From the NCBI RefSeq assembly GCF_001194135.2, contig NC_068992.1, positions 61,957,405 through 62,021,404 of the forward strand: a stretch of 64,000 bases of DNA. Direction: 5' to 3'. The position numbers and the translations under genes were made by a program. This DNA is from Octopus bimaculoides (Eukaryota). How positions within the stretch are numbered: position 1 is the stretch's first letter; every line of letters begins with the position of its first letter. The notes beneath the pieces are model-generated. The model made no database searches. It was not told the origin of the DNA and worked only from the letters and a program-made list of their open reading frames with translations. Positions 1,886-62,444 of this stretch are shown piece by piece.

Positions 1886-1937
1886 ACCAGATGTGAGTTT
1901 GTGTGTGTATGTGTGCATGTGTATGTATGTATGTATG

Positions 1938-2048
1938 TCATTGTTCAGTTTTATTTCAAGAATTCTTGCCAATAGAGAAAGAGCCAGTTTTTAACCGAGA
2001 TCCAAAGCTCCTTCATTACAATTTCAACATCAACAACAGGATAATTTT
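1938..2048 (-). mobile_element. Short 3' end of the (CATA)n-associated RLE LINE family
   Basis: Reverse complement matches 37735-37850 and 60945-61048; (TATG)n on both sides. Confidence 0.8.
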
Positions 2049-10149: not shown

Positions 10150-10455
10150 TTTAGCGTTCAAGGCTCCCGATCGTAACGTTGTTAGTTCGATCCCTGGCGG
10201 CATGTTGTGTTCTTCAGCAAGACACTTTGCTTCGTGTTGCTCCAGTTCACTCAAACAGCAAAAATGAGGTGTACACCTGCAATTTAAAGGGCTAACTTTG
10301 TCATATTCTGTGTCATGCTGAATCCCTATGAGAACTACGTTAAGGGTGCTTGTGTCTGTAGAACGCTCAGCCACTTGTATGTTAATTCCAGGAGCAGGCT
10401 ATTCCGTTTATCGGATAATCTGGAGTTCTCGTCGTCATATCCGACGGAACTCCAG
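10150..10455 (+). mobile_element. SINE family B (tRNA head, CORE-like centre)
   Basis: B-box GTTCGATCCC; TGTGTTCTTCAGCAAGACACTTTG..CTCCAGTTCACTCA resembles the CORE domain; tail CTCGTCGTCATATCCGACGGAACTCC. Confidence 0.85.
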
Positions 10456-42000: not shown

Positions 42001-42128
42001 GATGCTGAATGTGTGTGTGTATATANNNNNNNNNNATATATATATATATATATATATATATATCTGTGTGTATGTATGTGTGTATATATATGTATATATG
42101 TATATATTTGTATGTATGTATATATATG

Positions 42129-47880: not shown

Positions 47881-47896
47881 GTATATATATATATAT

Positions 47897-48215
47897 GGCA
47901 CTCCGTCGGTTACGACGACGACGAGGGTTCCCGTTAATCTGATCAACAGAACAGCCTGCTCGTGAAATTAACGTGCAACTGGCTGAGCATTCCGCAGACA
48001 CGTGTGCCCTTAACGTTGTTCTCGGGAAGATTCAGTGTGAAACAGGGTGTGACAAGACTGGACCTTTGGAATACAGGTACAACAGAAACAGGAAGAAAAA
48101 ATGAGAGAAAGTTGTAGTGAAAGAATACAGTAAGATTCAACCCCAAAGCCGGAGCCTCGTGGAGATTTAGATGCTTTTGCTCAATAAACACTCACAATAA
48201 AACCGCGATAATATA
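47897..48215 (-). mobile_element. SINE family B tail joined to a variant 5' part
   Basis: 47897-48080 matches 61785-61970; sequence diverges after AGGTACAAC. Confidence 0.75.
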
Positions 48216-59504: not shown

Positions 59505-60012
59505 TGTATGTGTAGGTGTGTGTATGCGTGCGCGCACACACACGCATACACAAACAAACGCATCGAAATTGTGATGGCTTTTGATCGATAGCTGATGAGG
59601 AACGAGCGTGTCTACTTCCTTTGTATGTTTTTCCCTTCTTCGCATGTTTCGTCGTCGACCTCATATGTCACATATACTCTCTCTCACACACACAAACACA
59701 TACACACACATGCACACACATGCACTATCATATATATAAATATATACTGTGTCCATATATCAATATTGAAATATATTCATGGTTAAATTTTAAAAAGTAC
59801 TTTTTCCCTTTTTTTAAAAAAAACTTTTGTTTATTTAGAAAAATATTAGCATTTATTGATAGGAAATGTTGATATTAAATATCATACACTATACAACAGT
59901 TCGAATATACACTTTCACACATGCATTCATACCAATCCACGCTTATATTACCACAAAAACACCCAATGTATATAAAAATACACCTGCGATTTCATTAAAA
60001 TGAACACAGACA

Positions 60013-60047
<35 letters not shown>

Positions 60048-60516
60048 CATACACACTCACATACAAACAACTCGAAATCGCACAGAAAAGCACGTACACA
60101 TATACGCATACACATCTCTTATAATATAACATATAAATATGCAATAACGAGGAAGCTTCTATAGAGTTACAGAAGATGCTAGAAAAAGCAACCAAACTTT
60201 ACCAAATTTCATGCTACGAATTCAATAATCTTAGATATACAACGTCTAAAAATAAGATGTGATGATGACGCCTGGAACATTTTTGATCTTAAGATTACTT
60301 GGTGACTGTTGACCTAAGGCTATAGAACAGCGGCAATGATAACGAAATCCTATATAGACACGTGCACATCTCCTTATGCATTACATAAGTATATACAGAT
60401 ATACACATTATGTATATACATATATACTGGTTGCGATTAGATTTCGAATAATGTCATCGCTTGACTTTTCGCTTAAACATAAGCAGTGCTGACGTAGCAC
60501 ATATACATACATACAT

Positions 60517-60899
60517 TGCCCTGCAGATATAAATATCTCTTTGAAAATCAAAGATAAATAGGATATCTATGTACAACTGCTTCGAAATCTCCAGCTTCTA
60601 TACTCAGATTATGAATTCATATTCATACCAATAATTATTGGGGCACTAGGTTTTGTTAGTAATTGCTTAAAGGAGAAGCTGGATAAACTGGGAATTTCAG
60701 AAAGAGAAATGGACCGGCTGATTCGTACATTACAAGTCCAGTCTGTGAGTGGAACAGTAAAAATATGCAAGACTTTTATTAAGTTCCAAATGTGAACTTG
60801 TCTGTGTTAACTACATCCCAAAGATGGAGCCTTGTATCTTTGTTGGAAACCGGCTCCCTCTTCTGTGGAAGATTTATAATGATTAAAAAATAGAAGACA
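60517..60899 (+). mobile_element. RLE-type LINE 3' fragment flanked by (CATA)n
   Basis: CPADINISLKIKDK*DIYVQLLRNLQLLYSDYEFIFIPIIIGALG...SGTVKICKTFIKFQM* (stop 60793-60795), then ~100-bp UTR. Confidence 0.88.
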
Positions 60900-60944
60900 C
60901 ATACATACATACATACATACATACATACATACATACATACATAC

Positions 60945-61048
60945 TTTGTTGATGTTGAAATTCCAATGAAGGAGCCTTGGATCTCGGTTAGAAACCGACT
61001 CTTCTATCTTTAGCAAGAAATCTTGAAATAAAACTGAATAATGACGAA
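60945..61048 (+). mobile_element. UTR-only 3' end of the same LINE family
   Basis: ATTCCAATGAAGGAGCCTTGGATCTCGGTTAGAAACCGACTC is homologous to 60815-60860. Confidence 0.8.
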
Positions 61049-61321
61049 CATATATACATGTATGCATGCATACATGCATACATACCTACATACATACATG
61101 CATACATACATACATACATACATTCATACATACCTACATACATACATACATACCTACATACATGCATGCATACATACATACATGCATGCATGCATACATA
61201 CATATATACATACATTCATACATACCTACATACATACACACATACCTACATACATACATACATGCATACATACATACATGCATACATACATACGTATACA
61301 TACATGCATGCATACATACAT

Positions 61322-61496
61322 AACTCGCACATTACAAATCCAATCTGTAAGTGGAAGTGTGAAAATATGCAAGACCTTTCTCAAGTTTAAAATATGACAC
61401 TGTTTTTCTTATCTACATTCCAATGATGGGACTTTCTTTGTTAGAAATCTGCTTCTTACTCGTATGAAGAATTTAAATGATTGAAACAGAAGGGAA
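61322..61496 (+). mobile_element. Third 3' end of the same LINE family
   Basis: TRTLQIQSVSGSVKICKTFLKFKI* plus homologous UTR, followed by CATACATAG. Confidence 0.85.
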
Positions 61497-61784
61497 CATA
61501 CATAGTACATACATAAGTACACAGGCGTATGTATGTATATCTACTTCACATAATGTCAACTTACAGGGGTACATACAAATACATTTCTCATAGCAAAAAA
61601 AAAAAAAAAAATAGACAGAAAAATAGACAGAACAGAGGAATATATACGCGTATGTTCCACTTGCTAGAAATAACAATTAGATATTCACTAAAATCACAAC
61701 ATAATGTCTTAAAATATAAACGAAACACAGAAGACCGTATTGAGGGATGTAGTCCAAGATACACTACGGCTTTATGATAGAGAT

Positions 61785-62109
61785 GGCACTCCATCAGTTA
61801 CGACGACGAGTGTTCTAGTTGATTCGGTAAATGGAACTGTCTGCTCGTGAAATTAACGTGCAAGTGGCTGAGCACTCCATAGACACGTGTACCCTTAACG
61901 TAGTTTCATTGGCGGTTCAGCGTGACACAGAATATGACATGGCTGGCTCTTTGAATTACAGGTACAACTCGTTTTTGCCAGTTGAGTGAAATAGAGCTAC
62001 GTGAAATAAAGTACCTTGCTCAAACACACAATGCATCGCTAAGAATTGAACCCTCCGATTTTACGATCGTGAACCGAATACCCTAACCACTAATCCACGT
62101 GCCTTCACC
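61785..62109 (-). mobile_element. SINE family B, full length
   Basis: Minus head GGTGAAGGCACGTGGATTAGTGG (A box)..GGTTCAATTC (B box); CORE-like centre; tail GTCGTAACTGATGGAGTGCC. Confidence 0.9.
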
Positions 62110-62444
62110 ATCTACATAATAACAGCTGATAAAAATGTTGGTTGGCTGCTTGATTTCTCGATCATATAGAGAGGGAGGAGCGAGTGTAAAAGAGAAACTG
62201 AGAGAGATAACTCAAGAGGTGCTGAATGAGTGAAGAAAAAAAGAATTATAGCGGCAGAGGAAGAGGTGGAGGAGATGGCAGAGGAGAGAGTAAATGACAG
62301 AGTACTTATGGGAGGATTTATATAAAAGAGAAAATTGTTTTATTTCATTATATTTTAAGGTAATTAATATTTTTCTCTTGAAAATTAATATTCATTTCAT
62401 CTTTTCGTATAAGCACCAAGAAATTCAATAATAGTTAAATTATG

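What the first reader, a model, noticed from the sequence alone, without database searches (positions are those of the whole stretch)
60501..61510. Stack of three RLE-LINE 3' ends separated by (CATA)n: candidate (CATA)n-targeting retrotransposon family
Seen: three co-oriented, differently 5'-truncated homologous 3' ends (60517-60899, 60945-61048, 61322-61496), each starting right after and ending right before CATA repeats. The longest encodes an RLE-type C-terminus (CPAD..K, IPIIIGALG) that the Met-based ORF track missed. Known: RLE-type non-LTR clades are often sequence-specific, and Dong targets (TAA)n. Inference: this family targets (CATA)n and its copies pile up in the same arrays, which could help generate the abundant (CATA)n. 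I do not recall a described (CATA)n-specific RLE LINE, but cannot confirm novelty.
Basis: partly seen in the sequence, partly recalled or inferred. Interest (0 to 1): 0.8.

Follow-up and report, generated by a model that had tools for sequence, protein, structure and literature searches.

The report
Retrotransposon lineage that targets ACAT repeats
Three dead, front-truncated copies of an R2-like jumping gene sit head-to-tail inside one (ACAT)n simple repeat of an octopus genome, and intact relatives elsewhere are bounded by ACAT repeats on both sides, so this lineage habitually inserts into that repeat: a new example of a known habit, not a new kind of system.

Summary
Window 60517-61496 holds three co-oriented 3' ends of a non-LTR retrotransposon. 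Each is bounded by sense-strand (ACAT)n.

- **Copies.** A has 92 codons plus a 104-nt 3'UTR. B is a 3'UTR only. C has 24 codons plus a 3'UTR. B belongs to a different subfamily from A and C, so the stack is made of independent insertions, not a local duplication.
- **Protein.** The coding tail is a true restriction-like endonuclease (RLE). A model of the homologous C-terminus superposes on R2 proteins (TM 0.76).
- **Target.** Full-length relatives (about 1150 aa: reverse transcriptase (RT), CCHC knuckle, RLE) from four mutually divergent lineages have (ACAT)n at the 5' boundary, and at the 3' boundary in the three whose contig reaches it. A fifth has it at the 3' end. A nested sister lineage shows the same stacking in (ACTT)n.
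- **Junction phase.** Junctions mostly fall between repeat units (ACAT|ACAT).
- **Arrays.** Most other ACAT arrays in the window carry no copy, so the arrays are targets rather than just tails.

The interpretation (an ACAT-targeting RLE LINE) is therefore supported. It is a new member of a known kind. Microsatellite-specific RLE LINEs (Dong, some HERO, Togen) and an ACAY-specific APE LINE (Waldo) are already described. I found no open paper on an ACAT-specific RLE LINE. Clade assignment (R4/Dong or HERO) stays unresolved. Interest is moderate.

The parts
60499..60516 (+). Short (ACAT)-like run forming the 5' flank of copy A, preceded by unique sequence
   Evidence: Read directly; junction table
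60517..60795 (+). Copy A coding tail: the last 92 codons of the ORF (second half of the RLE domain). It begins at CPAD, has an in-frame TAG at 60559-60561 and ends at the stop TGA 60793-60795. Dead fragment: no RT, no PD motif.
   Evidence: Translation. 46-60% identity to 18 database proteins. tblastn with the full-length relative, E 4e-22.
60796..60899 (+). Copy A 3'UTR unit (type 1, about 104 nt) with the conserved core GGAGCCTTG.ATCT..GTTGGAAACCGG
   Evidence: nhmmer E 1e-22; alignments
60899..60944 (+). Pure (ACAT)11.5 between copies A and B
   Evidence: TRF, 100% matches
60945..61048 (+). Copy B: a 3'UTR-only unit of a second subfamily (type 2). It is about 10 nt shorter at its 5' end than units D, E and L007.
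   Evidence: nhmmer E 1.5e-26. 84-87% identical to D and E, 83% to the O. vulgaris unit, 54-55% to A and C.
61048..61322 (+). Impure (ACAT)68 array between copies B and C
   Evidence: TRF, 84% matches
61322..61397 (+). Copy C coding tail: the last 24 codons plus the stop (TRTLQIQSVSGSVKICKTFLKFKI*)
   Evidence: Translation; 82% identical to A over the ORF tail
61398..61496 (+). Copy C 3'UTR unit (type 1)
   Evidence: nhmmer E 3e-18; 67% identical to A's unit
61496..61521 (+). Residual ACAT-like 3' flank of copy C
   Evidence: TRF; read directly
1937..2046 (-). Copy D: an isolated type-2 3'UTR unit on the minus strand, with sense-strand ACAT repeats on both sides (1920-1936 and 2047-2093)
   Evidence: blastn 88% to B, E 1e-30; sequence; nhmmer E 6.5e-28
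37246..37500 (+). Copy G: a type-2 coding tail (..VPVIIGAFGYVTNCLSTNLEKLGFS..), degenerate. Its 5' flank has no clean sense ACAT.
   Evidence: tblastn E 7e-9; sequence; 78% identical to the O. vulgaris copy
37584..37665 (+). Copy F: a partial type-2 3'UTR unit followed by ACAT
   Evidence: nhmmer E 1.4e-16
37733..37846 (+). Copy E: a complete type-2 3'UTR unit within ACAT-like repeats
   Evidence: blastn 85% to B; nhmmer E 3.7e-28

Best explanation
The segment is a pile-up of three dead, 5'-truncated copies of a single-ORF non-LTR retrotransposon of the R2-like group, which encodes a restriction-like endonuclease (RLE). This lineage integrates specifically into (ACAT)n microsatellites, in one orientation and mostly between repeat units (ACAT|ACAT).

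**Proposed mechanism.**
1. The element protein has an N-terminal three-helix domain, a reverse transcriptase (RT), a CRxC..H..C knuckle and a PD-D-K nuclease. It recognises the repeat and nicks one strand.
2. The RT binds the conserved 3'UTR unit of about 105 nt on its own RNA.
3. It primes cDNA synthesis from the nick (target-primed reverse transcription).
4. Synthesis usually aborts early, which leaves 3' fragments.
5. Each insertion leaves ACAT repeats on both sides. The array therefore stays a target, and later insertions stack up, including insertions of other subfamilies (copy B).

**Shown here.**
- The anatomy and homology of the copies.
- The RLE fold and conserved catalytic residues in relatives.
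- ACAT flanks on both sides of full-length relatives, and ACAT at the 5' junctions of truncated copies.
- Fixed orientation.
- The independent origin of copy B.

**Inferred.**
- The nick position.
- The use of the 3'UTR as the RT binding site.
- Any pairing of an (ACAU)n read-through tail with the nicked target.

The window copies themselves are inactive relics.
For: 1. **Anatomy.**
2. **RLE identity.** The PD..D.N..K pattern is conserved. The AF2 model has pLDDT 87 and Foldseek puts R2Tg, R2Pm and R2Bm on top at E 2e-9 to 8e-5, TM 0.69-0.76. The RT of relatives matches R2 proteins at E 4.5e-27 and Pfam RVT_1 at 2e-21.
3. **Full-length relatives on separate contigs and samples.** L004, L011 and L012 have (ACAT)n at both boundaries. 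At L004's 5' boundary the adjacent run is only two units, with (ACAT)47 lying 30 nt further out. L010 has (ACAT)41 at the 5' boundary and its 3' end is off the contig. L014 has (ACAT)n at the 3' end. The sequences upstream of these 5' arrays do not look like the 3' end of another copy.
4. **Octopus copies.** Sense ACAT lies at 6 of 8 5' junctions and 5 of 7 3' junctions, against a background of about 2%.
5. **Phase.** 5' flanks mostly end ..ACAT|. 3' flanks begin |(A)CATACAT.
6. **Sister lineage.** It has identical stacking in (ACTT)n, with ACTT|ACTT junctions.
7. **Independent insertions.** B is 83-89% identical to units 59 kb away on the other strand and in O. vulgaris, but only 54-55% identical to its neighbours.
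8. **Arrays without copies.** Large ACAT arrays lacking any copy exist in the window, so arrays are not merely element tails.
9. **Precedent.** Most RLE LINE clades are target-specific, some for microsatellites (PMC4640811).
Against: - The sample is small: 8 octopus copies in 4 clusters and 5 outside lineages of unknown host. Stacked copies share arrays, so junction counts are not independent.
- Two octopus junctions lack ACAT. The O. vulgaris copy L007 ends in ..AATGA|ctgacatatatattt. Copy G's 5' flank reads atgtatgta.
- L004's 5' junction has a 30-nt inverted duplicate between the long array and the element.
- No empty orthologous site could be examined.
- No biochemical evidence exists for cleavage specificity.
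- The N-terminal domain has no significant structural match.
- A conserved RNA structure in the 3' unit is not supported by covariation.
Confidence: 0.8

Rival explanations
1. Tail only. The element is not target-specific. It simply ends in an (ACAT)n tail, as many LINEs end in short tandem repeats. The apparent 5' repeats are the tails of upstream copies, or chance in a microsatellite-rich genome.
For: Every copy has the repeat on its 3' side in the sense orientation. Within stacks, the 5' repeat of B and C could be the tail of A and B. LINE 3' ends are known to seed microsatellite families, as with RTE in Lepidoptera (PMC2887409, listed). The pure (ACAT)11.5 after A contrasts with the impure array after B.
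Against: Full-length relatives L010, L011 and L012 have long (ACAT)n directly at the 5' boundary, and L004 has a short run there with a long array 30 nt upstream. None has a recognisable upstream copy. The outermost 5' junctions of clusters A, D and L007 also carry ACAT next to unique or other-repeat sequence. The background for this is about 2%. The O. vulgaris copy has ACAT at 5' but essentially none at 3', which is the opposite of this model.
Confidence: 0.1
2. Local tandem duplication. The stack arose by unequal crossing-over or replication slippage between ACAT arrays, which multiplied one inserted copy in place.
For: Microsatellite arrays favour unequal exchange. In the 37.5-kb cluster, F and E may be a local duplication, because the 19-mer aaatctgcacatgcactga occurs upstream of both. 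A and C belong to the same subfamily.
Against: B is only 54-55% identical to A and C, but 83-89% identical to copies elsewhere in the window, on the other strand and in another species. A and C are truncated at different points and are only 67-82% identical.
Confidence: 0.05
3. Passive accumulation. Insertions are random, but survive preferentially in or near simple repeats (gene-poor, low-recombination DNA). This was proposed for Waldo-A and Waldo-B near CA repeats in Drosophila.
For: The window is extremely repeat-rich. PMC3812793 cites this explanation for Waldo-A and Waldo-B.
Against: Junctions abut the repeat directly, in one orientation and mostly in one phase. The window holds many other microsatellite types ((AC)n, (AT)n, (GA)n, (AGAT)n), yet copies sit only in ACAT. 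A related lineage sits only in ACTT.
Confidence: 0.03
4. A variant of the main model. The type-2 110-nt unit (B, D, E) is a separate, very abundant non-autonomous mini-element, mobilised in trans by the LINE through the shared 3'UTR. It is not a set of extreme 5' truncations.
For: D, E, F and the O. vulgaris unit start at the same point (..AAATA(C/T)CCTGTTG..), exactly where the 3'UTR begins after the stop codon in A and C. There are about 4 units in 75 kb of octopus DNA. All three longer ORF-tail copies (A, G, L007) are followed by ACAT and then such a unit.
Against: In G and L007 the unit follows an ORF tail of the matching subfamily, separated only by an ACAT-like stretch. It may therefore be that subfamily's own 3'UTR behind an internal microsatellite. 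The fixed 5' boundary could then come from microhomology joining within that internal ACAT. The unit has no promoter-like module, and ARAGORN finds no tRNA-like part. B starts about 10 nt later than the others.
Confidence: 0.3

Closest known systems
Dong (R4 clade; Bombyx mori, Anopheles gambiae, and DongBg in the snail Biomphalaria glabrata)
   Same: An RLE-encoding, single-ORF non-LTR retrotransposon that inserts sequence-specifically into a microsatellite (PMC3812793; PMC4640811). No N-terminal C2H2 fingers were found here; from memory, R4-clade elements also lack them. Octopus genomes are reported to hold many 'Dong-R4' LINEs (PMC13282606).
   Different: Dong's target is (TAA)n, not (ACAT)n. 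Phylogenetic relatedness was not tested, because no reference sequences were available. The window holds a separate RLE-LINE fragment with an (AAT)n tail (about 29900-30665). That fragment is a better Dong candidate and is clearly a different family.
HERO clade families with microsatellite specificity (Kapitonov & Jurka 2014, Repbase Reports 14:311, leech)
   Same: RLE LINEs from a lophotrochozoan that are said to target microsatellites (cited in PMC4640811).
   Different: The report could not be read, so the repeat motif and sequence relatedness are unknown. These could even be the same lineage.
Togen (fish; near the NeSL and HERO clades)
   Same: RLE LINE families specific for a microsatellite (PMC4640811).
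   Different: The target is (TG)n and the hosts are vertebrates. Relatedness was not tested.
Waldo (WaldoAg1/2, WaldoFs1; R1 clade)
   Same: It inserts into ACAY microsatellites, which is essentially the same target repeat (PMC3812793).
   Different: Waldo carries an APE-type endonuclease and has the two-ORF R1 architecture. The present family has a C-terminal RLE. The shared target would therefore be convergent.
R2 (28S rDNA-specific; solved structures 9dou, 9nl3, 9nl2, 8gh6, 8ibw)
   Same: It is the closest solved structure for both the RT (E 4.5e-27) and the knuckle plus RLE (TM 0.76). It has the same order RT, CRxC..H..C, PD-D-K and presumably the same TPRT mechanism.
   Different: R2 targets 28S rDNA and has N-terminal zinc fingers plus Myb. 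Here there are no C2H2 fingers, the N-terminal domain is an unmatched three-helix bundle, and no HDV-like ribozyme was found at the 5' end.

Membership tests
RLE-encoding (R2-like group) non-LTR retrotransposons | C-terminal PD-(D/E)xK restriction-like endonuclease preceded by a CCHC knuckle | tested here: met
   Window copy A holds the D..N..K half. Relatives add the HN(K/R)PD motif and CRxC..H..C. The AF2 model matches the R2 knuckle plus RLE at E 2e-9, TM 0.76.
RLE-encoding (R2-like group) non-LTR retrotransposons | Reverse transcriptase domain in the same single ORF, upstream of the endonuclease | tested here: met
   Met in relatives only: an ORF of 1133-1184 aa, Pfam RVT_1 at 2e-21, and R2 RT at E 4.5e-27. 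The window copies are truncated and hold no RT.
RLE-encoding (R2-like group) non-LTR retrotransposons | No LTRs; variable 5' truncation with a common 3' end | tested here: met
   A, C, G and L007 are truncated at different points and share the 3' unit.
Microsatellite-specific LINE (as Dong, Togen, Waldo) | The same repeat, in the same orientation, directly at both junctions of full-length and truncated copies | tested here: met
   L004, L011 and L012 on both sides; L010 at 5'; L014 at 3'. Octopus copies: 6/8 at 5' and 5/7 at 3'. The sample is small.
Microsatellite-specific LINE (as Dong, Togen, Waldo) | Uninterrupted repeat at orthologous empty sites | not testable with these tools
   No searchable octopus genome collection was available.
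R2 clade proper | Insertion in the conserved 28S rDNA site | tested here: not met
   Flanks are (ACAT)n or (ACTT)n, not rDNA.
R2 clade proper | N-terminal C2H2 zinc finger(s) plus Myb | tested here: not met
   There is no C2H2-like motif in the N-terminal region of 18 relatives. The N-terminal three-helix model has no significant match.
R4/Dong clade | RT-domain phylogeny grouping with R4, Dong and Rex6 | not tested
Dong | (TAA)n target | tested here: not met
   The target is ACAT. A distinct (AAT)n-tailed fragment lies at about 29900-30665.
HERO clade | RT-domain phylogeny grouping with HERO-1_SP, HERO-1_BF and HERO-1_HR | not tested
   No reference sequences were available, and the Repbase Report was not readable.
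Waldo / R1 clade | APE-type endonuclease N-terminal to the RT | tested here: not met
   Pfam finds only RVT_1 and a weak zf-RVT hit. The endonuclease is a C-terminal RLE.

The most novel reading that the evidence does not exclude
This would be an old, widely distributed and so far undescribed RLE-LINE lineage in marine invertebrates, including cephalopods. Its members are tuned to tetranucleotide repeats. Within it, target specificity switched by a single base of the repeat unit (ACAT to ACTT). The repeat would be read by a previously unclassified N-terminal three-helix domain. That would give a natural pair of closely related proteins for learning how R2-like enzymes read very short DNA targets.
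Probability: 0.3. Interest if true: 0.55.

Novelty: new member of a known kind. Interest (0 to 1): 0.4.

Why it matters
- **Genome annotation.** It explains why short blocks of about 100-400 bp of shared sequence recur next to ACAT repeats in octopus DNA. This matters for repeat annotation, microsatellite marker design and assembly gaps. Many relatives sit on contigs of about 4 kb that break exactly at the flanking repeats.
- **Transposon biology.** It adds a tetranucleotide target to the RLE LINE repertoire. It is convergent with the unrelated APE-type Waldo, and it offers an apparent one-base target switch (ACAT to ACTT) inside one lineage.
- **Retrotransposon engineering.** Groups engineering R2-like proteins could use pairs of intact relatives with different simple targets as material for mapping specificity determinants.

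None of this changes current understanding of how such elements work.

Tried and rejected
1. **5' ribozyme or other known RNA.** An Rfam scan of four full-length relatives gave only mir-297-type pseudo-hits on the ACAT arrays themselves.
2. **Conserved RNA fold in the 3' unit.** RNAalifold on six octopus units gave -7.8 kcal/mol with an unfavourable covariation term. This is not convincing.
3. **N-terminal domain as Myb or homeodomain.** The three-helix model is confident, but the best Foldseek E is 0.77. Pfam finds nothing there.
4. **Clade assignment.** No named R4, Dong or HERO reference could be obtained. The only named distant hit is a moth protein at 28% identity (L013). It has (AAT)6 upstream and a CTTG-like array about 930 nt downstream of the gene call, which is uninterpretable.
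5. **Prior description.** Nine searches of open papers found Dong, HERO, Togen and Waldo, and octopus 'Dong-R4' counts. None linked an RLE LINE to ACAT repeats. Repbase Reports, Kapitonov 2009 and Fell 2025 are not held.
6. **Further copies in the window.** An nhmmer profile and tblastn found none beyond A-G. The other large ACAT arrays have no adjacent copy.
7. **Octopus full-length copies.** None appeared in the protein database, so all full-length evidence comes from unidentified ENA and TARA contigs.
Full report
**Observation.**

The window is AT-rich, microsatellite-rich draft eukaryotic DNA with 8819 N. Its interspersed repeats match Octopus vulgaris chromosome OX597824.1 at about 90%, so it comes from an octopus.

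At 60.5-61.5 kb the sequence reads as follows:
- unique DNA;
- an 18-nt ACAT run (60499-60516);
- copy A (60517-60899);
- a pure (ACAT)11.5 (60899-60944);
- copy B (60945-61048);
- an impure (ACAT)68 (61048-61322);
- copy C (61322-61496);
- a short ACAT remnant.

Copy A encodes 92 codons in frame 3, CPADINISLKIKDK*DIYVQLL..IPIIIGALG..KFQM*. It has one in-frame TAG at 60559 and the ORF stop at 60793, followed by a 104-nt 3'UTR. Copy C holds the last 24 codons plus a 100-nt 3'UTR. A and C are 74.7% identical over 166 nt, E 3e-25. B is a 3'UTR only. Plain blastn links it to A over just 42 nt. A profile of the unit recovers A, B and C over about 100 nt each, at E 1e-18 to 1e-26.

**More copies, and two subfamilies.**

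The same profile finds exactly four further units in the window and one in the O. vulgaris locus L007:
- D (1937-2046, minus strand);
- E (37733-37846);
- F (37584-37665, partial);
- a coding tail G (about 37246-37500);
- L007:10472-10577.

B, D, E and L007 are 83-89% identical to each other. B is only 54-55% identical to its neighbours A and C. The stack is therefore not a local tandem duplication. It combines independent insertions of two subfamilies.

In subfamily 1 (A, C) the unit begins at the stop codon. In subfamily 2 (G, L007) an ACAT-like stretch lies between the ORF end and the unit. D, E, F and L007 share one 5' boundary. I could not decide whether these 110-nt units are extreme truncations joined within that internal repeat or a trans-mobilised mini-element.

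**What the protein is.**

The tail finds 18 short proteins at 46-60% identity, one of them from O. vulgaris. They extend it upstream with HN(K/R)PD..W...C.IIEFSCPAD.N...K.

Genomic context of one hit gave a near-intact element, L004. It has a 1157-codon frame with a single in-frame TGA, Pfam RVT_1 at 2e-21 and an RT match to solved R2 proteins at E 4.5e-27. A search with that protein returned many intact relatives of 1133-1184 aa, most of them on contigs of about 4 kb.

All relatives have one CRxC..H..C knuckle and no N-terminal C2H2 finger. Those at 39% identity or more to L004 carry an FVDD-type RT motif (FIDD or YVDD in two); the 26-31% lineages carry YMDD, YVDD or FMDD. In a 14-sequence alignment of the C-terminus, D147, N149 and K157 are invariant, and P125 and D126 nearly so.

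An AlphaFold model of that region has pLDDT 87.4 and pTM 0.83. It superposes on the knuckle plus RLE part of R2Tg, R2Pm and R2Bm (E 2e-9 to 8e-5, TM 0.69-0.76, rmsd about 3 A). Other PD-(D/E)xK nucleases follow far behind.

The conserved N-terminal 80 residues fold as a confident three-helix bundle but match nothing significantly.

**Target or tail?**

- **Full-length relatives.** Relatives from separate samples, only about 50% identical to each other in protein, carry (ACAT)n at the 5' boundary.
  - L004 has a two-unit ACAT directly at the boundary and (ACAT)47 thirty nucleotides further out. Its 3' side has more than 90 units.
  - L010 has (ACAT)41 at 5'. Its 3' end is off the contig.
  - L011 has (ACAT)13 on each side.
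  - L012 has (ACAT)17 at 5' and (ACAT)n at 3'.
  - L014, at 39% identity, ends in (ACAT)n.
  - A 31% relative ends in poly(A).
  - The DNA left of the 5' arrays does not resemble another copy's 3' end.
- **Octopus copies.** In octopus DNA, 6 of 8 5' junctions and 5 of 7 3' junctions have two or more sense ACAT units within a few nucleotides. The background is about 1.6-2%. Counting only the outer junctions of the four clusters gives 6 of 8.
- **Orientation and phase.** Orientation is always the same. 5' flanks mostly end ..ACAT| and 3' flanks start |(A)CATACAT, so insertion falls between units.
- **Arrays without copies.** Large ACAT arrays at 18.7, 24.5, 36.0 and 59.5 kb have no copy beside them. 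Only about a third of the perfect ACAT bases in the window lie in the three clusters. Arrays are thus pre-existing targets. The suggestion that the family generates the abundant ACAT is not supported.
- **Exceptions.** L007 has almost no ACAT at its 3' end. Copy G's 5' flank is ambiguous.

**A sister lineage with another repeat.**

Relatives whose RLE tails are as close to copy A as the ACAT-type relatives are (P0003, P0005, P0004, P0010) sit in (ACTT)n. L002 shows a stack of three 3' ends separated by (ACTT)n, with ACTT|ACTT junctions. L001, L008 and L009 end in (ACTT)n after a long 3'UTR. In a low-resolution NJ tree of 123 C-terminal columns, this lineage is nested among ACAT lineages, with the ACAT-tailed P0034 outside. 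That suggests a derived one-base switch of target. This is inference from few data.

**Mechanism.**

By homology with R2, the element most likely works in these steps:
1. It nicks the repeat with its RLE.
2. It primes reverse transcription of its own RNA from the nick.
3. It often stops early, which gives 3' fragments.
4. Each insertion leaves the repeat on both sides, so arrays are hit again and copies stack.

A short CCGG-containing core lies 50-65 nt from the 3' end and recurs in all lineages. It is a candidate RT binding site, but covariation does not support a fold. No 5' ribozyme was found. The nick site, the role of an (ACAU)n read-through tail and the role of the N-terminal domain are all inferred.

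**Comparison with known families.**

- Most RLE clades are target-specific, and microsatellite specificity is on record: Dong for (TAA)n, including a snail copy; some leech HERO families; and Togen for (TG)n (PMC4640811; PMC3812793).
- ACAY repeats are the target of Waldo, but Waldo is an APE-type R1-clade element. The shared target would be convergent.
- Octopus genomes are reported to carry abundant 'Dong-R4' and a few 'Hero' LINEs, with no comment on targets (PMC13282606 and PMC8967140).
- I found no open paper that describes an ACAT-specific RLE LINE. Repbase Reports and Dfam could not be consulted, and I could not place the family in the R4/Dong or HERO clade.
- It is not R2 proper, since it has no rDNA target and no zinc fingers. 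It is not Dong proper, since the target is different.

**Verdict.**

The finding is a new member, or possibly an unremarked existing library entry, of a known kind of element. Interest is moderate.

Noticed in passing
window about 29900-30665 (+): A separate, degenerate 5'-truncated RLE-LINE fragment of a different family. It has a CCHC region (..GETVWHILNKCSKLAQSEYKRRHDNV..), then H.EPD..., ..IIEFDCPGNI.. and ..PIIIGALD... About 170 nt after the coding tail it ends in (AAT)n at 30630-30665. It is a candidate Dong-type (TAA)n element in the same window.
   Followed up: partly
window 1937-2046(-), 37733-37846, 60945-61048; L007:10472-10577: The type-2 110-nt unit recurs about once per 15-20 kb. 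D, E, F and L007 share a 5' boundary (AAATA(C/T)CCTGTTG). The unit follows all three longer ORF-tail copies after an ACAT stretch. It may be a non-autonomous mini-element, or a product of joining within an internal ACAT stretch.
   Followed up: partly
L002:9601-10880; L001:11150-11380; L008:11180-11379; L009:1440-1600: A sister lineage of the same LINE family is embedded in (ACTT)n instead of (ACAT)n, with the same stacking of 3' ends. In L008 the array changes from ACTT to ACTG.
   Followed up: partly
L004:6330-6600 (same in L003, L005, L006): The 30 nt between the long 5' (ACAT)47 and the element (tcttttataatttcaaataaatatttttct) are the reverse complement of the sequence just left of the array. 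The array therefore sits in the loop of an inverted repeat. This could be a target-site rearrangement or an assembly artefact.
   Followed up: no
window 60846-60853, 60992-61000; L002:10496-10502; L004:10485-10492; L011 about 4230; L012 about 4405; L001 about 11217: A short (A/G)NCCGG-type core (gaaaccgg, tagccgg, gaaccgg, gatcgg) lies about 50-65 nt upstream of the 3' junction in every lineage, despite otherwise unalignable 3'UTRs.
   Followed up: partly
window 37548-37566 and 37680-37698: The 19-mer aaatctgcacatgcactga occurs twice, once upstream of unit F and once upstream of unit E. This suggests a local duplication of about 130 bp inside that cluster.
   Followed up: no
window 61730-62110: A SINE-like interspersed repeat lies directly downstream of the stack. 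It has at least five other copies in the window (34538-34788, 10205-10448, 47889-48083 and others, 76-88% identity) and one in O. vulgaris L007. ARAGORN finds no tRNA-like gene in the window.
   Followed up: partly
P0044 (contig not fetched); L015: More distant relatives differ. P0044 (30% identity, 1446 aa) carries an extra OTU-like domain (PF02338). P0043 in L015 (31%) ends in poly(A) rather than a tetranucleotide repeat.
   Followed up: no
L004, L010, L011, L012 ACAT arrays: Rfam's mir-297, mir-1277 and mir-3149 models give sub-threshold hits on the minus strand of plain (ACAT)n arrays. This is a source of false miRNA calls in such genomes.
   Followed up: yes
window-wide (for example 18560-18716, 42050-42124, 59690-59700): Many assembly gaps (8819 N in total) abut AT/ACAT-type simple repeats. 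Relatives of the LINE often sit on contigs of about 4 kb that end in the flanking repeat. These elements and their targets seem to be frequent assembly breakpoints.
   Followed up: no
L013 (Loxostege sticticalis CM081032.1): The only named distant relative (28% identity) has (AAT)6 about 570 nt upstream of the gene call and an impure CTTG/GCAT-type array about 930 nt downstream. Its target could not be read.
   Followed up: partly
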